Below are positions 6,136 to 11,425 of a stretch of 64,000 bases of DNA, in pieces. How positions within the stretch are numbered: the stretch's first letter is position 1; each line of letters starts with the position of its first letter. The notes beneath the pieces were generated by a model. That model had not been told where the DNA came from. It searched no databases and saw only the letters and a program-made list of their open reading frames with translations. The stretch is from IMG/VR virus record IMGVR_UViG_3300044712_001937, positions 1-64,000 of that record; one strand, written 5' to 3'. The position numbers were made by a program, and so were the translations under genes.

Positions 6136-7233
6136 TTAAAGTTTAAATTTATTTTGCATTTTTGCTTTTTTTCTAAGTTCATTAACTTCTCTCAATGCAT
6201 TTGGGTTATAAATTTCACGTTTCACTATTGACACAAGATGATTAAATTCACTTTCAGTTATTGCTTGTCCTACATACCCCTCATTTTTCAATATATAACT
6301 TTTAGGAGCTGAACTTGATGCTGAAGGATTACCTTCTGAATCAATAGTACTTTCAAATGTCATCTCAAGCAATTCCTGAATTTTTTCAGTAACATTTGCA
6401 GTAATTTTCTGCTTAGTCTTTTTCAATGCCTTTTCAAGCATATCAACTACATTCTCCTGATGATTTCTTTTTACTTCAGCATATGCCATAGTAAAATCTT
6501 TCATTGGTGAACTATGTTTAAGTTCAGAAATTATAGCTAATGAACCATAACAGTCACGAATCATTAAATTCCAAACTTGTTCAGCATATGTGAACGATGG
6601 AAATTTATCAATTGCAACAATTTCTCCTTCAATAAAAACAATCATTCCAATCATTTTCTTAGGACGTTCAAAATGTGCAATAAATTGTTCAAGTTTTTTA
6701 TCATACTTGCTAAAATATACATCTAAATAATTACCAGCAGATGATTGAGTATCTATACCTAATTTATTAATCGCAGGATAAATTCTTGAATATCCGGGTG
6801 CTGTTCCAACAGTATTAAATACCATTTCACGCATAGTTACTGGAAGCATACGGAATTCTTGAGTACCTCTAAAAGTACCACCTTGAGAACCTTGGACACA
6901 TCCAGCATCATTATAAGTAACATTTGCTCCTTTAGCAATATAACCTGCCTTAGTCATACCGTGATTTTGAGCAACTTGCTTTGTCATAACAGCCATTTGT
7001 GTAGGTACAATTACTTCTTTACTTTCTTTATTTTGAAAGTTTATTTGTCCATATGAACTATTACCAGCTACTAATGCTGTTAATGGGTTTGCAAACCGAG
7101 TATCTAATGAATATTCTGAATCTGTTGTTAAACCAACAATTTGCATATTCAATATAGATTGAACTATGATGTTACCATCATTATCCTTGATAGGACGGCA
7201 ACCTTTAAGTAATTCTGTAAATTCTCTTGTCAT
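6136..7233 (-). CDS. ARPP-like (ARG/rhodanese-phosphatase-associated) domain protein
   Basis: 365 aa; motifs KQVAQNHGM, AGCVQGSQGG and GMIVFIEGEIVAID resemble ARPP-family proteins as recalled (no HMM run); starts 12 nt after the vWA gene stop. Confidence 0.5.
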   Translation of the reverse strand: MTREFTELLKGCRPIKDNDGNIIVQSILNMQIVGLTTDSEYSLDTRFANPLTALVAGNSSYGQINFQNKESKEVIVPTQMAVMTKQVAQNHGMTKAGYIAKGANVTYNDAGCVQGSQGGTFRGTQEFRMLPVTMREMVFNTVGTAPGYSRIYPAINKLGIDTQSSAGNYLDVYFSKYDKKLEQFIAHFERPKKMIGMIVFIEGEIVAIDKFPSFTYAEQVWNLMIRDCYGSLAIISELKHSSPMKDFTMAYAEVKRNHQENVVDMLEKALKKTKQKITANVTEKIQELLEMTFESTIDSEGNPSASSSAPKSYILKNEGYVGQAITESEFNHLVSIVKREIYNPNALREVNELRKKAKMQNKFKL

Positions 7234-7245
7234 AGTATATATTTT

Positions 7246-8874
7246 TTAAACGTTTACACTAATTTTTTTTGACCTTTTAACTGGTGCAGCTTCAAGAGCC
7301 AACATTTGAGTTTCAAGCCATCTTTTTGTATCAATTTCAAGCAATCTTGCAGTAATTTGTGGTTGAATTGCACTTGGGTTACTTATTGCCATTGGAACTA
7401 CACTTGTACCTAATTTACGTACATTAGCACCCATTTCTGCACTTGTTATTGGCGAAATCTGAAACATTGGAGTATTTCTACCAGTTTCTGTTTGCCAAAT
7501 CGAAATAACCTCATTAGTTAATCCATCATAAGCATTTTCATAGCCATCAGTTATGATAAAAATAGCATCATAAGGTTTTGACGAATTTTCAACTTTCAAT
7601 AATCCAATAAATGAACTTGCTAAATCAGTTACTTCACCACCAGTTACAACAATATTAGTTAATTCCGCAGATTTACCCAATACTTTTGCTGTAAAATCAG
7701 CAATTGCTTTTGGAGTATTCTTTGATTCAATTTTATCACCTGACATTGAATTACTATCATCAACAATAATTCCAATATTTTTATAATAGAAATTATTGAT
7801 TCTTTTCTTAATAGCAAGTTTATCTATTGCTGAAATTATTTCAGGAGTAAATGATGTTTCATAACCAGTTTTATATAAAGCCAAGAAATCTGTTGCTTTA
7901 TCCATATCAACAGTCTTTTCAACACCCAACTTTGCAGTTGATTTTGTTTGACGGATTTGTTGATTTGTTGATGTAACTTCAACATTCTTTCTGATTAAAG
8001 CTTTAGTTGCTTGTTTTTGAATATCAGTAGACCACATTGAATGATATTGTGGATGTTTAACACTTGAAATTAATCCAAGTAAAACTTCTTCCGGAACATT
8101 TTTAATTCCAGTAATATCAACCTTTGCTTTTAAATATTCACTCAACAATGGAAAATCTAAAGCTGGATAATTTACACCATTATCTTTTTTAAATAAAAAA
8201 AGAAATAATTTAAACGCACGTGAAGCATCACCATTAAAATATTTTAATATATATTCATTAATAATATTACTTTCCTTTTCAGTTGTAACGCCATTTGAAT
8301 ATACAACAAGTTTACGAGCAATTGAAAGCAATATAGATGTTTTCTTTTGACCATATACATGTTTTAAAATTTCAGCAATTTTATTTCGATATTTTAATGA
8401 AAAAAATTCAAGATTTGATTGTCCCCAAATATATCCAAGAATAATTTTTCTTGTCCTTTCATTATTTACTTTAGAATTTTTTAAATCAACAAAAAGACGT
8501 AACACATAAGGTAAACCATTATCTGCAAGATTATCTAATGATGATAATATTGCTTTATCACTTAAACCATTATCATACCAATCAATAGGATTAACAATAT
8601 TACATGCACCTCCCTTTAATGTATTTTTTAATTCATTAAGCAATACTTCAGATATAAATCGACCAGTAGCACCTTTTTGGGTTGCAATAATCAATGGGAG
8701 TTCTTTTGAAAGCATATACATATTCTTAATTTGAGATTGTATTGCTTTCAATTGTTCATCTTTAGAGTGGTAATAAGTAGCACTGCTCTTAGCACCACTT
8801 GCCACTGTCAAACCATCAGTAATTGATTGCTTAACTGTAGACAACATGTTGTTTGTTAATACCAAATTTTTCAT
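7246..8874 (-). CDS. Helical N-terminal region + C-terminal vWA (MIDAS) protein, TROVE/Ro60-like architecture
   Basis: 542 aa; MIDAS-type IIVDDSNSMSG and FIITDGYEN in the C-terminal ~180 aa; the preceding ~350 aa look alpha-helical and Lys/Leu-rich. vWA call is solid; TROVE relationship is inferred. Confidence 0.6.
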   Translation of the reverse strand: MKNLVLTNNMLSTVKQSITDGLTVASGAKSSATYYHSKDEQLKAIQSQIKNMYMLSKELPLIIATQKGATGRFISEVLLNELKNTLKGGACNIVNPIDWYDNGLSDKAILSSLDNLADNGLPYVLRLFVDLKNSKVNNERTRKIILGYIWGQSNLEFFSLKYRNKIAEILKHVYGQKKTSILLSIARKLVVYSNGVTTEKESNIINEYILKYFNGDASRAFKLFLFLFKKDNGVNYPALDFPLLSEYLKAKVDITGIKNVPEEVLLGLISSVKHPQYHSMWSTDIQKQATKALIRKNVEVTSTNQQIRQTKSTAKLGVEKTVDMDKATDFLALYKTGYETSFTPEIISAIDKLAIKKRINNFYYKNIGIIVDDSNSMSGDKIESKNTPKAIADFTAKVLGKSAELTNIVVTGGEVTDLASSFIGLLKVENSSKPYDAIFIITDGYENAYDGLTNEVISIWQTETGRNTPMFQISPITSAEMGANVRKLGTSVVPMAISNPSAIQPQITARLLEIDTKRWLETQMLALEAAPVKRSKKISVNV

Positions 8875-8960
8875 CTTACTAAATTTAAATTTTTGTTACA
8901 GTTATATTTATAAAAAATCAAAAATACATAAATTAATTTAATTAATCACAATAATAAACA

Positions 8961-9010
8961 AAAAAAATGGGCAAGTATTGTATAATTTCTTATACAAATC
9001 CCCGCCCATT
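8961..9010 (-). terminator. Terminator-like hairpin with GAAA tetraloop at the 3' end of the ncRNA cluster
   Basis: Minus strand: AATGGGC-gggga-t-TTGTATAA-gaaa-TTATACAA-tactt-GCCCATT followed by a T run. Confidence 0.6.
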
Positions 9011-9053
9011 AATTTTTGGAAAAATAAATCTTCTCAATAAGAGAAGAAGTTTA

Positions 9054-9119
9054 GTTGTATTTTTACAAGTTTGTGCCACCACTATCGGATGGCAAATTTC
9101 AATTTGCTGTATACACAAC
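9054..9119 (-). ncRNA. Stand-alone copy of the repeated RNA motif (element B)
   Basis: Minus strand: GTTGTGTATACAGCAAA ... TGCCA/TGGCA hairpin ... TGTAAAAATACAAC; terminal 7-bp stem GTTGTGT/ATACAAC. Confidence 0.55.
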
Positions 9120-9322
9120 AAGTTCTTCCATAATGCTTTTTTTTGAAAAACTCCCACACTTCTGTGGCAGAAAACCATTTTTAACCTTCAAATGTTAGAT
9201 GATACTACCCTTTTTATAAGTAAAATTTCTCGTATCAAGAACTGAAAAACACCACAAATTACGGTATTGTGGACAACCACTTCAAACATCCTTTGGATGA
9301 TGATAATATTTCGGGAATATTG

Positions 9323-9440
9323 TAAAAGTATTTTTGTTTTTGTGCAAGTTTAAGAGACTTGTGCCTTAACCACTTGGCTATTTTTCAATTTTGGCTGAAA
9401 AAGTCGGAGTCGAACCAACGAATTTACTGTAAATACTTTA
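9323..9440 (-). ncRNA. Circularly permuted tRNA-Lys(CUU)-like RNA closed by the repeated motif (element D)
   Basis: Minus-strand order: motif strand 1, T arm (GTTGG-TTCGACT-CCGAC), acceptor 3' TTTTTCA-G-CCA, linker AAAT, acceptor 5' TGAAAAA, D arm GCCAAGTGGTTAAGGC, anticodon arm CAAGT-CTCTTAA-ACTTG, motif strand 2. Confidence 0.75.
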
Positions 9441-9557
9441 AGTTTTCCCTTATGCTGTACCTCAAAGTTTGAATTGCTTCAGGGACAATGAGGAATTCCA
9501 TTCACACGGTTACGTTAACTTTCGTTAAGAGGCTTGACCGTGCATCACGTTTATATT

Positions 9558-10187
9558 TTAAAGAACTCTACCAAATGACCAACCAATTGGTATTGTATCA
9601 TTAGTTTTTATTTTTTTATTTTCATTACCGTTTGTAATCCAACGAGTATTATATTGAGAATTATTTTCACCACAGTTTTTACCTTTATGAACTTTCTTCA
9701 TCAACATTATTGTTTCATTAGAATGTTTCTTACCATCCCAATATCCATTCATTCCATTTTTGCTCAAAAATTCTTTTTGACCTATAGATTGCTTTTTGCA
9801 TTGATTATTTCTCCATTCATCGTTATTCATTAATTCAATAAAACGTTTATTACCCTTTTTAGAATTTATGATTTGTTGTTCATGAGAAAATCCTCCAGTA
9901 CCACCAACACGTAAATTAATACATTTAGGGTCTAACAATAGAGAATCATTAACCAATTCATTTTCTCTTAAAGCCAAAGAACTTCGGTCAGAATAATATT
10001 CAAGCACTTCTAATTTAAAATTTTCTTTGCCATATTTATTTATCGACCTTTTCAATCTTTTTCCACTTCCCAAATAATCATCATTTAAATTATTTGTAGA
10101 ATGCATTCCAATATAAAATTCACCTTTTATTAAATTGGTTGTTTTATAAATAAAATGATATTTTTTTAACTCATTTAAATTTGCCAT
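9558..10187 (-). mobile_element. Free-standing GIY-YIG (Seg-like) homing endonuclease
   Basis: HFIYKTTNLIKGEFYIGMHST, YLGSGK, conserved E; NUMOD3-like KKHSNET motif. Confidence 0.85.
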
Positions 10188-10238
10188 ATCAAAACAATAT
10201 TTTGATATAAATACTAAACAAATTCAAAAAAGTCCAAG

Positions 10239-10373
10239 TGGGGAGAATTGGAATCGAACCAATAATCAACTGTTTTCAAGACAATTTGCTTTACCTTTAC
10301 TGAAAACACCATTAGTTTTCTCACTTAAGAGAACATTGAGATAGTATTTTTTGTTTATTTTTGCTATCTCCCC
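10239..10373 (-). ncRNA. tRNA-like RNA with ~60-nt motif-bearing insertion in the D-loop (element E)
   Basis: Acceptor GGGGAGA/TCTCCCC-A, T arm ATTGG-TTCGATT-CCAAT, anticodon arm ATTGT-CTTGAAA-ACAGT; D region interrupted by AAAAAATAC...GTGTTTTCAGTAAA; no encoded CCA. Confidence 0.7.
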
Positions 10374-10400
10374 ATATTTAAAATTTTAAAGAACTTCAAA

Positions 10401-10429
10401 AAATGAAGAGTTTTTAATTCTTCATTTTG
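10401..10429 (-). terminator. Terminator-like hairpin
   Basis: AAAATGAAGA/TCTTCATTTT inverted repeat followed by T on the minus strand; AT-rich, so weak. Confidence 0.4.
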
Positions 10430-10439
10430 TATGTTAAAT

Positions 10440-10542
10440 TTAAGGTGGCGCAGACCTATTATGGCTGTCATTTTCTGTCATTACATCAGAACCACAAATT
10501 ACGGTTGGGTTAACCAGCAACTACATTTCTGCATTTCGTAAT
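10440..10542 (-). ncRNA. Putative structured ncRNA downstream of tRNA-Met (element G)
   Basis: Non-coding and locally GC-richer; stems GATTACG/CGTAATT, GTTG/CAAC and TTCTG/CAGAA; shares an exact 15-mer with 9251..9265. Confidence 0.4.
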
Positions 10543-10555
10543 CTTAAATTTTTCG

Positions 10556-10627
10556 TAGCGGAAGCAGGACTCGAACCTACGACCTTTTGGTTATGAGCCA
10601 AACGAGATGCCGCTTCTCTATTCCGCA
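10556..10627 (-). tRNA. tRNA-Met(CAU), initiator-like
   Basis: Full cloverleaf: TGCGGAA/TTCCGCT-A with a 1:72 mismatch, D stem GAGA/TCTC, TTTGG-CTCATAA-CCAAA, GTAGG-TTCGAGT-CCTGC; CCA not encoded. Confidence 0.92.
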
Positions 10628-10641
10628 ATATATTTTTAATT

Positions 10642-11061
10642 TTAATATCTATTAGAAACACATTCTTTACAATGTCCATTTACACCATTCCATCTTCGAT
10701 TGCATTTATGAAATTCTTCCATTTTTTTCATCTTTTTACATTTTGAACAAAATGAATATCCTTCTTTACATTTAATTCTTTTATGGAAACCTCCGAATCT
10801 TCTTTCAGGTAAATTACATTTCATATGACTAAATGCAATATTATCTAAACTAAAAAACAACTCTTTAGGATTTTCACTATGAAGCCAATTTTCCTTATGT
10901 TCAATACTTAATTCATCAACATTTAAAATTGGCTTTTTACATTTAAAACAAATATTCTCATTCAATTTACATAATAAATGAAATAATATTTGTTTTCTTA
11001 ATTTACCAGATGCAGTACCTAAAGGCATTCCTAATTGTGCATCTTTATCTTTACAACTCAT
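10642..11061 (-). CDS. HNH endonuclease with CxxC zinc knuckles
   Basis: CFKC...SIEHKE...NIAFSHMKCN (HNH-type) plus C-terminal CSKC/CKEC. Confidence 0.7.
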   Translation of the reverse strand: MSCKDKDAQLGMPLGTASGKLRKQILFHLLCKLNENICFKCKKPILNVDELSIEHKENWLHSENPKELFFSLDNIAFSHMKCNLPERRFGGFHKRIKCKEGYSFCSKCKKMKKMEEFHKCNRRWNGVNGHCKECVSNRY

Positions 11062-11094
11062 TATCCTATGATATTTAGTTATAATTATTTTTTG

Positions 11095-11227
11095 TGGGGA
11101 AGGTCAGAATCGAACTGACAATCAATTGTTTTAACGACAACTTGCTGTACCTTTACTGTAAATATAGCCAGTTCTCCAAAAGGAGTAATACGATTATATT
11201 TTTTGTATATAATTTGCATACTTCCCC
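11095..11227 (-). ncRNA. tRNA-like RNA with motif-bearing D-loop insertion (element F), paralog of element E
   Basis: Acceptor GGGGAAG/CTTCCCC-A, T arm GTCAG-TTCGATT-CTGAC, anticodon arm GTTGT-CGTTAAA-ACAAT; insertion AAAAAATAT...ATATTTACAGTAAA. Confidence 0.7.
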
Positions 11228-11281
11228 AAATATTTTTTTTACATAATGTAAAAGAACTTTTTTCTTATCTCTAAGACGATA

Positions 11282-11313
11282 CAAACATACAACACCTTTT
11301 TTTATTTTCCAAA
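11282..11313 (-). promoter_or_regulatory. Bacteroidota sigma-ABfr-type promoter driving the ncRNA cluster
   Basis: Minus strand TTTG (11313-11310), 20-nt spacer, TATGTTTG (11289-11282): matches the -33 TTTG / -7 TAnnTTTG consensus. Confidence 0.7.
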
Positions 11314-11425
11314 TATTTTTCAATAATATTTTTAAAAAAATGTAAAATAATTTATAATCGTCTGAGAGATAAATACGTTAATAATTCAAAAAAGTCATAT
11401 TTATTTATAAAAAAAATTAAAAATT

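What the first reader, a model, noticed from the sequence alone, without database searches (positions are those of the whole stretch)
11095..11227. Second D-loop-insertion tRNA-like gene (element F), with an ochre-reading UUA in the canonical register
Seen: a paralog of element E (GGGGA.., TGATT variable loop, TTCGATT, AAAGGTA.AGCAA) with canonical spacing and anticodon loop C-G-UUA-A-A; an alternative register gives GUU (Asn). Many genes in this window end in TAA and the standard code yields long ORFs, so a functional ochre suppressor is unlikely, and G33 instead of U33 also argues against decoding. Inference: the anticodon has drifted because the RNA acts as a structural mimic or decoy, for example against anticodon nucleases or in RNA repair.
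Basis: partly seen in the sequence, partly recalled or inferred. Interest (0 to 1): 0.7.

Follow-up and report, generated by a model that had tools for sequence, protein, structure and literature searches.

The report
tRNA-shaped Y-RNA-like phage RNA
Element F is a real, conserved 133-nt tRNA-shaped RNA gene of a huge phage. It is not a stop-codon suppressor; it most likely belongs to a set of Y-RNA-like tRNA mimics that work with a very divergent Ro60-like protein encoded just downstream.

Summary
Window 11227..11095 (minus strand) encodes a 133-nt paralog of element E. It has a 7-bp acceptor stem, a T arm, a 5-nt variable loop and a 5-bp stem with the loop C-G-UUA-A-A. About 57 nt are inserted between D-stem positions 11 and 14.

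A covariance model finds 28 distinct relatives, all in related huge-phage contigs. In these, 98.7% of predicted pairs form and 18 of 33 pairs show compensatory changes.

The ochre reading fails. In 22 of 28 relatives the loop is N-UUGAA-N, and F's nearest relative has GUUGAAA, so F's UUA with G33 is a private deviation. The genome uses the standard code, and TAA ends 300 of 359 long ORFs.

New context: wherever the contig is long enough (28 of 28 cases), the RNA lies 0.5-2.8 kb upstream of, and on the same strand as, a 542-aa protein. That protein's confident model (pLDDT 93) matches only Ro60/Rsr structures over its full length.

F's insertion is homologous to the closing stem of a neighbouring YrlA-like permuted tRNA mimic.

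Best reading (about 0.6): F is a circularly permuted Y-RNA-like partner of the phage Ro60. Expression and binding are untested.

The parts
11095..11227 (-). Element F: 133-nt tRNA-shaped RNA gene (5' G at 11227, discriminator A at 11095)
   Evidence: Sequence. Family model 109.6 bits. Covariation.
11159..11215 (-). Insertion in the D arm of F. It holds an A/C-rich strand, helix A (AAAUAUA with UAUAUUU), hairpin P3 (CUCC/GGAG) and AACU. This is the candidate Ro-binding module.
   Evidence: RNAalifold and pair counts. It is homologous to the terminal stem of the neighbouring YrlA-like RNA when that stem is circularly permuted.
11125..11141 (-). Anticodon-like arm of F: stem GUUGU/ACAAU, loop CGUUAAA (UUA at 11134-11132, G33 at 11135)
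   Evidence: All five stem pairs covary across the family.
11103..11119 (-). T arm of F with loop UUCGAUU
   Evidence: 4 of 5 pairs show compensatory changes.
11282..11289 (-). TATGTTTG, a Bacteroidota-type -7 promoter box (TAnnTTTG). It ends 54 nt upstream of the 5' G of F and is conserved upstream of copies in the same position in other contigs.
   Evidence: Upstream sequences lined up. The consensus itself comes from general knowledge, so this is an inference.
10239..10373 (-). Element E: paralog of F with the family-typical loop CUUGAAA
   Evidence: Family model 143 bits.
10555..10627 (-). tRNA-Met(CAU) between F and E, initiator-like (U1-U72 mismatch, A11:U24). A tRNA-Met sits next to the family member in nearly all related contigs.
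9313..9449 (-). 'XY' RNA: a YrlA-like permuted tRNA mimic. In order: P1, helix A, T arm, a 7-bp acceptor stem closed by a loop containing G-CCA, D arm, anticodon-like arm, A/C-rich strand, P1.
   Evidence: 20 distinct homologs; 22 of 36 pairs show compensatory changes. Coordinates.
9044..9130 (-). 'Z': a fourth copy of the same stem module, carrying only a 7-bp hairpin with a 7-nt loop
   Evidence: Motif scan, conservation with L070, read by eye.
7246..8874 (-). 542-aa Ro60-like protein gene (helical-repeat ring plus a vWA domain with a MIDAS motif)
   Evidence: AF2 pLDDT 93.4. The top 13 Foldseek PDB hits are all Ro60/Rsr/TROVE. Atlas features. MIDAS motif. Synteny.
10642..11061 (-). HNH homing-endonuclease gene inserted between F and the tRNA-Met (not part of the RNA system)
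9558..10187 (-). GIY-YIG homing-endonuclease gene inserted between E and XY. It is absent at this place in L070.

Best explanation
F is one of several small RNAs encoded just upstream of a divergent phage Ro60 (Rsr-like) gene. It is best read as a Y-RNA-like tRNA mimic.

Shown:
- F has a complete tRNA-like body: acceptor stem, anticodon-like arm, T arm, U8, G10-C25 and C11-G24, and a GG in the D loop.
- It also carries a conserved ~57-nt module (helix A plus hairpin P3) inserted in the D arm.

Shown by homology:
- The same module forms the terminal 5'/3' stem of the neighbouring YrlA-like RNA. That is the position where Y RNAs carry their Ro60-binding site.

Inferred:
- The module is the handle by which the phage Ro60-like ring holds F.
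- The tRNA-shaped body is matured by RNase P and CCA addition, and it engages a tRNA-recognising partner. Examples are the KH/S1 domains of host PNPase, as in Ro60/Y-RNA/PNPase complexes, or other tRNA-binding enzymes.
- F therefore tethers or gates Ro60 during infection rather than decoding.

F's UUA loop is a derived variant of the family's UUGAA loop. Either constraint relaxed after the gene duplicated, or this copy was retargeted. It does not read ochre codons.
For: Real structured family:
- 37 hits and 28 distinct sequences.
- 98.7% of cells paired, against about 50% when the partners are slid. 18 of 33 pairs show compensatory changes.

Locus:
- In 28 of 28 cases with enough downstream DNA, the RNA lies 0.5-2.8 kb upstream of the Ro60-like gene on the same strand (synteny). 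This is the criterion Chen et al. used for YrlA (PMC4201824).

Protein:
- AF2 model with pLDDT 93.4 and pTM 0.91.
- Foldseek PDB ranks 1-13 are all Ro60/Rsr/TROVE, including the Ro60 of phage phiLo. Probability is 1.00 and TM 0.41-0.50 over the full length, followed by a sharp drop to TM about 0.1.
- 62 of 100 atlas feature hits are TROVE clusters.
- DxSxS...TDG MIDAS motif.

Neighbouring RNA:
- XY has the T arm, closed acceptor, D arm order of YrlA, a 7-bp acceptor stem and a conserved CCA in the closing loop. This matches M. smegmatis YrlA, which is cut by RNase P and receives CCA.

Module homology:
- Permuted XY aligns to the E insertion with score 70, against 42 +/- 4 for shuffles, and to F with score 54, against 42 +/- 4.
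- The module motif occurs four times within the 2-kb cluster, against five weaker matches elsewhere in the other 362 kb.

Precedent:
- Phage Ro60 proteins with upstream Y-like RNAs (PMC4201824; PMC12135203).
- Y RNAs co-transcribed with a tRNA.

Against decoding:
-.
Against: - There are no expression data; no RNA run was listed.
- No binding test was possible (one search was not folded).
- The protein has no sequence-level link to TROVE, so the Ro60 assignment rests on fold, architecture and language-model features.
- F lacks the GNCGAA motif of bacterial Y RNAs, and no Rfam Y-RNA model matches.
- F's topology (open acceptor end, module in the D arm) is not that of any described Y RNA.
- The strict conservation of UUGAA in most members is not explained by a simple tether model.
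- Proximity to the Ro60-like gene could reflect only a shared RNA-gene island.
Confidence: 0.6

Rival explanations
1. F is a decoy for host tRNA-targeting nucleases (anticodon nucleases, PIN or HEPN toxins) and acts independently of Ro60. Its tRNA shape attracts the nuclease, while the D-arm insertion keeps it off the ribosome.
For: - The phage invests heavily in tRNA supply and repair: 49 tRNAs and a tmRNA, a T4 Rnl1-type RNA ligase and a CCA-adding-type enzyme.
- All deviant loops have U35, that is NAN-codon-type anticodons, which are frequent nuclease targets (target classes from general knowledge).
Against: - The majority loop mimics tRNA-Ser(UGA), which is not a classic nuclease target.
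- A decoy does not explain the conserved helix A/P3 module shared with the YrlA-like RNA.
- It does not explain the invariable linkage to the Ro60-like gene.
Confidence: 0.15
2. F is a precursor. The helix A/P3 module is an intervening sequence that is cut out, and the exons are sealed (for example by the phage Rnl1-like ligase) to give a tRNA of about 75 nt.
For: - In related contigs the same module forms the paired leader and trailer that abut the ends of a tRNA-like gene.
- Cutting after GC and after CAG would leave a 3-bp D stem (GCU/AGC) around a loop containing GG in the E-type copies (read).
- An RNA ligase gene is present.
Against: - No enzymatic tRNA splicing is known in bacteria or their phages.
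- In F the joined D stem would have mismatches.
- The product would carry UGA or UUA anticodons but has no long variable arm for SerRS, so it has no obvious charging identity.
- There are no read data.
Confidence: 0.1
3. F is a functional ochre (UAA/UAG) suppressor tRNA, or another decoding tRNA with an enlarged D arm.
For: - UUA sits in the canonical register of a 7-nt loop on a 5-bp stem, with A37.
- Acceptor stem and T arm are intact.
- The genome also carries a tRNA with anticodon CUA.
Against: - G33 replaces the near-universal U33.
- The anticodon is not conserved. F's nearest relative has UGA, and the copy at the same position in the other huge phage has GUA with C33.
- TAA ends 84% of long ORFs, and no alternative code raises coding density.
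- The insertion sits at D-stem positions 11-13, which contact 23S rRNA helix 69 on the ribosome (general knowledge, inference).
- It scores below the Rfam tRNA threshold and ARAGORN does not call it.
Confidence: 0.03
4. F is only a processing signal (an RNase P/Z punctuation mark for the operon) or a decaying duplicate of E with no function of its own.
For: - F's loop deviates from the family consensus.
- F lies next to a homing-endonuclease insertion.
Against: - Every helix is intact, and F keeps the near-invariant 15-nt D-loop block with one change, which its nearest relative shares.
- It keeps its own conserved promoter-like box.
- A two-copy arrangement also exists in two other phages.
Confidence: 0.07

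Closest known systems
Bacterial and phage YrlA-type Y RNAs bound by Ro60/Rsr (Chen et al. 2014, PMC4201824; Thermus phage phiLo Yrl1/Yrl2, PMC12135203)
   Same: - Encoded just upstream of a Ro60-type gene on the same strand.
- Several different RNAs per locus, mixed with a tRNA gene.
- A tRNA-like domain that keeps the T-loop and D-loop tertiary nucleotides.
- The neighbouring XY RNA has the YrlA order (T arm, closed acceptor, D arm) plus CCA in the acceptor loop, as in M. smegmatis YrlA.
   Different: - In F the candidate Ro-binding stem is closed by a loop and grafted into the D arm.
- The acceptor end is open, and a full anticodon-like arm is present.
- F has no GNCGAA motif and no Rfam Y-RNA match.
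- The partner protein is too divergent for the Pfam TROVE model.
D. radiodurans Yrn1
   Same: Another permutation of a tRNA-like Y RNA, with the Ro-binding stem at the acceptor position, a 5-bp 'anticodon' stem and a T arm. It resembles the leader/trailer-stem tRNA-like genes seen in related contigs.
   Different: F places the stem in the D arm. No sequence similarity was tested or seen.
Phage T4 species 1 RNA (rnaC, 139 nt; function unknown, PMC3014915)
   Same: - Similar size.
- Lies in a tRNA cluster next to a GIY-YIG homing endonuclease.
- The predicted fold has a terminal acceptor-like stem, a long arm in place of the D arm, an anticodon-like hairpin and a T arm.
   Different: - The family model finds no match.
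- The rnaC hairpin has a 6-nt loop on a 10-bp stem.
- T4 has no Ro60 gene (general knowledge).
Canonical and suppressor tRNAs
   Same: 7-bp acceptor stem, 5-bp T stem with a UUCGAUU loop, a 5-bp stem with a 7-nt loop, A37, a 5-nt variable loop, and a discriminator A.
   Different: - The D stem is reduced to 2 bp and interrupted by 57 nt.
- G33 in F.
- The anticodon is not conserved.
- tRNA detectors do not call it.

Membership tests
Decoding tRNA | Cloverleaf recognised by tRNA models (Rfam RF00005 gathering score, ARAGORN) | tested here: not met
   F scores 16.2 bits against a gathering score of 29. ARAGORN finds nothing, with or without introns.
Decoding tRNA | U33 and a 3-4-bp D stem | tested here: not met
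   F has G33. Only G10-C25 and C11-G24 remain, interrupted by 57 nt.
Decoding tRNA | 7-bp acceptor stem and a T arm with a GTTCRA loop | tested here: met
Ochre suppressor tRNA | Anticodon UUA kept among orthologs | tested here: not met
   The nearest relative (L012:2619-2750) has GUUGAAA. The positional counterpart in L015 has CCGUAAA. 22 of 28 members have UUGAA.
Ochre suppressor tRNA | Genomic signs that TAA is read through or reassigned | tested here: not met
   TAA ends 300 of 359 ORFs of at least 100 aa. The standard code covers 87% of the genome, and the gaps are RNA clusters.
Ochre suppressor tRNA | Aminoacylation and suppression activity | not testable with these tools
   Needs a bench assay.
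Y RNA (YrlA type) | Encoded within about 4 kb of a Ro60 ortholog, on the same strand | tested here: met
   F is 2.2 kb upstream. 28 of 28 testable family members lie 0.5-2.8 kb upstream on the same strand.
Y RNA (YrlA type) | tRNA-like domain with conserved T and D features | tested here: met
   invariant GG block, G53-C61, and a UUCRA T loop.
Y RNA (YrlA type) | 5'/3' terminal stem as the Ro site, with the T arm, closed acceptor, D arm order | tested here: not met
   F has an open acceptor end and an internal module. The neighbouring XY RNA does meet this feature.
Y RNA (YrlA type) | GNCGAAN0-1G / CGAA motif near the 5' strand | tested here: not met
   Absent in F and E. CGAA is present at the equivalent place in about half of the XY homologs.
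Y RNA (YrlA type) | Match to Rfam Y-RNA family models | tested here: not met
   No such match up to E = 10 over 8900-11400.
Y RNA (YrlA type) | Physical binding to Ro60 | not testable with these tools
   The complex-prediction job was not folded.
Ro60/TROVE protein (the 542-aa neighbour) | Helical-repeat ring plus a C-terminal vWA fold | tested here: met
   The 13 best PDB matches are all Ro60/Rsr/TROVE over the full length. VIA-align, run on the first lower-confidence model, gives Z about 10-11.7 for Ro60 chains and Z 13 for the vWA domain alone.
Ro60/TROVE protein (the 542-aa neighbour) | Pfam TROVE (PF05731) sequence match | tested here: not met
   A profile search against PDB sequences was also negative.
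tmRNA | G3-U70 pair, tag reading frame, pseudoknots | tested here: not met
   F has G3-C70 and no conserved frame (P3 length varies by non-multiples of 3). The genome has a standard tmRNA elsewhere.
T4 rnaC | Detectable homology | tested here: not met
   No hit of the family model in the T4 tRNA region apart from tRNA-Gln.

The most novel reading that the evidence does not exclude
This phage clade uses one portable Ro60-binding stem module that can be grafted onto a tRNA fold at several different sites: the acceptor end, the variable region (XY) and the D arm (E and F).

E and F would then be a new, third topology of Y RNA. It would be a CCA-ended, possibly chargeable tRNA body that carries Ro60 as cargo to tRNA-handling machinery. 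Its anticodon-like loop (UUGAA in most members, changed in F) would select the partner or target.
Probability: 0.25. Interest if true: 0.8.

Novelty: new variant of a known kind. Interest (0 to 1): 0.62.

Why it matters
Why bacterial Y RNAs mimic tRNA is still unknown.

This phage clade offers a natural set of circular permutations. One conserved stem module is attached to tRNA-like bodies at different positions, next to a Ro60 that is too divergent for sequence models to find.

- It gives direct handles for mapping which part binds Ro60 and which part contacts the effector.
- It shows that Ro60/Y-RNA systems in huge phages are under-annotated.
- It is a caution against calling suppressor tRNAs from an anticodon triplet alone.

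Tried and rejected
- Alternative genetic code. Coding density with TAG, TGA or TAA read as sense gives no real gain. Rejected.
- ARAGORN with introns up to 300 nt does not call E or F.
- Rfam at E up to 10 gives only weak tRNA matches, with no Y RNA, ROOL, GOLLD or other tRNA-mimic family.
- GenBank phages (blastn, distant mode) match only the homing-endonuclease genes.
- T4 rnaC and rnaD share topology but show no model match.
- Expression. Only four DNA runs from rhizosphere metagenomes were listed, and no RNA run was listed.
- An alternative helix pairing the 5' strand (GAGAUAG) with CUAUCUC is 89.6% paired with weak covariation. It may be an alternative conformer but is not the main fold.
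- The genome contigs pattern scan returned scattered matches in unrelated taxa. They look like chance 17-mers and were not followed up.
- Sequence-level links of the 542-aa protein to TROVE or to PDB sequences were negative.
- There is no RtcB and no class-II aaRS core in the genome.
- Complex prediction with the Ro60-like protein plus F was not folded and gave no verdict. It counts neither for nor against binding.
- Literature searches found no description of a tRNA-like RNA with a D-arm insertion.
- The idea that the loop displays a stop codon (every loop contains UGA or UAA) was considered. It is too likely by chance in A-rich loops.

Full report
**What is at the coordinates**

The window is the first 64 kb of a 364,702-bp virus record with direct terminal repeats and about 25% G+C. 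The minus strand of 11227..11095 reads as a 133-nt tRNA-shaped RNA. In order it has:
- the acceptor strand GGGGAAG, then UAU, then GC;
- 57 inserted nucleotides;
- the block CAGUAAAGGUACAGC;
- a 5-bp stem with the 7-nt loop CGUUAAA;
- the variable loop UGAUU;
- a T arm with loop UUCGAUU;
- the acceptor strand CUUCCCC and a discriminator A.

F is a paralog of element E at 10373..10239. ARAGORN and the Rfam tRNA model do not accept either one.

**It is a conserved, structured RNA family**

Pattern scans of IMG/VR and of metagenome contigs, followed by a covariance model built from ten E-type copies, gave 37 matches and 28 distinct sequences.

On the model-guided alignment, 98.7% of cells form standard pairs. 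The figure is 45-54% when the 3' partners are slid by one to three columns. Of the 33 pairs, 18 show compensatory changes. These include all five pairs of the anticodon-like stem, four of five T-stem pairs and three acceptor pairs.

The insertion consists of:
- an A/C-rich single strand;
- a 9-bp helix (helix A) between that strand and a G/U-rich strand;
- an enclosed hairpin (P3);
- the invariant AAC-U.

The D stem survives as G10-C25 and C11-G24. The D-loop block with its GG is almost invariant. In the whole genome only E and F are full members.

**The ochre reading**

In 22 of the 28 sequences the loop is N-UUGAA-N, that is U33, anticodon UGA and A37. This holds even in two lineages where the stem has been completely exchanged (ACAAU/AUUGU). 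The loop is therefore under selection and is not drifting.

Six sequences deviate:
- F (CGUUAAA);
- both copies in the other ~357-kb (huge) phage relative, L015 (CCGUAAA and CUAUUAA);
- L004 (UUAUGAU);
- the near-identical pair L003 and L161 (GUUUGAA).

F's closest relative by sequence (L012:2619-2750) has the consensus GUUGAAA. F and its positional counterpart in L015 both lack U33.

The genome shows no sign of recoding. ORFs of at least 70 aa cover 87% under the standard code, and the larger gaps include the tRNA/RNA clusters. Reading TAG or TGA as sense adds almost nothing. TAA ends 300 of 359 ORFs of at least 100 aa.

The insertion also sits at D-stem positions that contact 23S rRNA helix 69 on the ribosome (established structural knowledge; this step is my inference). 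I conclude that F is not an ochre suppressor.

**The context changes the interpretation**

All family members lie in one syntenic slot of related phage contigs. The slot runs from a DnaB-like helicase gene, through an RNA cluster, to a conserved 542-aa protein gene. An initiator-like tRNA-Met is almost always beside them.

The 542-aa protein has no Pfam, PHROG, NCBIfam or PDB sequence match. Other evidence points to Ro60:
- Its language-model features point to TROVE plus vWA clusters.
- Its alignment shows a DxSxS...TDG MIDAS motif.
- With a deep alignment of 84 diverse homologs, AlphaFold gave a model with pLDDT 93.4 and pTM 0.91.
- Foldseek against the PDB put only Ro60 proteins in ranks 1-13: human, Xenopus, Deinococcus Rsr and Thermus phage phiLo Ro60. 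Probability was 1.00 and TM 0.41-0.50 over the whole length. The next hits fell to TM about 0.1. A first, poorer model gave the same ranking.

In every case where the contig extends far enough (28 of 28), the Ro60-like gene starts 0.5-2.8 kb downstream of the RNA on the same strand. Chen et al. used exactly this signature to find bacterial and phage Y RNAs (PMC4201824). Phage phiLo Ro60 binds two Y-like RNAs encoded upstream of its gene, and together they form complexes with host PNPase (PMC12135203).

**The neighbouring RNAs support this reading**

Downstream of E and an inserted GIY-YIG gene lies a 137-nt RNA at 9449..9313, called XY here. It has 20 distinct homologs, and 22 of its 36 pairs show compensatory changes.

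Its parts, in order, are:
- a terminal stem, formed by P1 (GGGAA/UUCCC) plus a 10-bp helix A;
- a T arm;
- a 7-8-bp acceptor stem closed by a loop that nearly always contains N-CCA;
- a D arm;
- an anticodon-like arm;
- an A/C-rich strand.

This is the order of YrlA: T arm, closed acceptor, D arm. The 7-bp stem with CCA recalls M. smegmatis YrlA, which is cut by RNase P and receives CCA. CGAA stands near the 5' strand in about half of the homologs.

When the 3' and 5' ends of XY are joined, the sequence aligns along the whole insertion of E with score 70, against 42 +/- 4 for shuffles. For F the score is 54, against 42 +/- 4.

The module motif (GRAACU, 8-10 nt, then CAGYAA) occurs four times in the 2-kb cluster, in F, E, XY and a fourth element Z; the rest of the 365-kb genome has only five weaker matches.

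In related contigs the same module forms the paired leader and trailer of another tRNA-like gene. That is the topology described for Deinococcus Yrn1.

So one stem module is attached to tRNA-like bodies at the acceptor end, in the variable region (XY) and in the D arm (E and F).

**Mechanism proposed**

Shown:
- The fold.
- Its conservation.
- The homology of the module.
- The linkage to a protein with the Ro60 fold.

Inferred:
- The helix A/P3 module is the Ro60 handle.
- F is transcribed from its own promoter. A TAnnTTTG box, typical of Bacteroidota, ends 54 nt upstream and is conserved in copies at the same position.
- F is trimmed by RNase P and given CCA. The phage encodes a CCA-adding-type enzyme.
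- F presents its tRNA-shaped body to a tRNA-recognising partner, and so tethers or gates Ro60.

The phage also carries 49 tRNAs, a tmRNA and a T4 Rnl1-type ligase. RNA quality control or repair during infection is therefore a plausible setting.

I give this reading about 0.6. The rivals are:
- a nuclease decoy independent of Ro60 (0.15);
- a spliced precursor (0.10);
- a processing signal or relic (0.07);
- a decoding suppressor (0.03).

**What is unexplained**

- The model does not account for the strict conservation of UUGAA, which is identical to a tRNA-Ser(UGA) anticodon loop.
- All deviant loops carry U35.
- Some XY RNAs share F's acceptor stem (GGGGAAG/CUUCCCC, then A and CCA).

Expression could not be tested: only DNA runs from rhizosphere metagenomes were listed. 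The complex prediction was not run by the tool.

**Novelty**

Y-RNA-like tRNA mimics next to Ro60 are known, including in phages. A Y-like RNA with an open acceptor end, a full anticodon-like arm and the stem module inside the D arm has not been described in the literature I could search. The partner Ro60 escapes sequence-based annotation. I class F as a new variant of a known kind.

Noticed in passing
window 9313-9449 (-): A YrlA-like permuted tRNA mimic ('XY'). It has a T arm, a 7-bp acceptor stem closed by a loop containing G-CCA, a D arm and an anticodon-like arm (loop CUCUUAA), all held by a terminal stem. There are 20 distinct homologs with strong covariation. No Rfam match except a 34-bit tRNA hit on its 5' half.
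   Followed up: yes
window about 8960-9313 (-): A further conserved non-coding stretch, 77% identical to contig L070. It includes a fourth copy of the stem module ('Z', about 9130-9044) that carries a simple 7-bp/7-nt hairpin. It ends in a strong terminator-like hairpin plus a T run just before the Ro60-like gene. The 62-aa ORF here (8990-9178) is not conserved in frame.
   Followed up: partly
G000:C1 104000-148200 (outside the window): The phage carries 49 tRNA genes, many in pairs. One copy is normal (72-76 nt) and the second has a long, class-II-like variable arm (84-89 nt), for Gln, Glu, Val, Trp, Lys, Cys, Asn and Ile. A tmRNA lies at 111992-112351.
   Followed up: partly
G000:C1 148036-148110 (+): A tRNA with anticodon CUA (amber-suppressor type), although coding density gives no sign that TAG is reassigned.
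   Followed up: partly
G000:C1 138920-139074 (+) and 109089-109187 (+): Two more tRNA-like sequences that ARAGORN misses. The first has a normal acceptor stem, D arm and T arm, but about 95 nt in place of the anticodon loop. The second has extra 5' sequence and the loop UUUAAAU.
   Followed up: no
window 10555-10627 (-): The tRNA-Met(CAU) in the cluster looks initiator-like: a U1-U72 mismatch, A11:U24, and two G:C pairs next to the loop. A tRNA-Met accompanies the family in nearly every related contig.
   Followed up: partly
window 10642-11061 (-) and 9558-10187 (-): HNH and GIY-YIG homing-endonuclease genes sit inside the RNA cluster. In relatives, the HNH gene's place is taken by a tRNA-like gene with a paired leader and trailer and variable, often U33-less, loops (ACGUCAA, CUUCAGA and others).
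   Followed up: partly
window 6136-7233 (-): The gene after the Ro60-like gene encodes a 365-aa protein with an ARPP-1 domain (PF20208, E 6e-13). It is 61-77% identical across the related contigs and always adjacent, so it may be a further component of the system.
   Followed up: no
G000:C1 117697-118233 (+) and 342623-343009 (-): A T4 Rnl1-type RNA ligase gene, and a CCA-adding/poly(A)-polymerase-family domain inside a 749-aa ORF.
   Followed up: no
alignment A6 (family loops), F at window 11130-11136: All six deviant anticodon-like loops have U at position 35. Every loop in the family contains UGA or UAA in the sense direction. This may be chance in A-rich loops, and it is unexplained.
   Followed up: no
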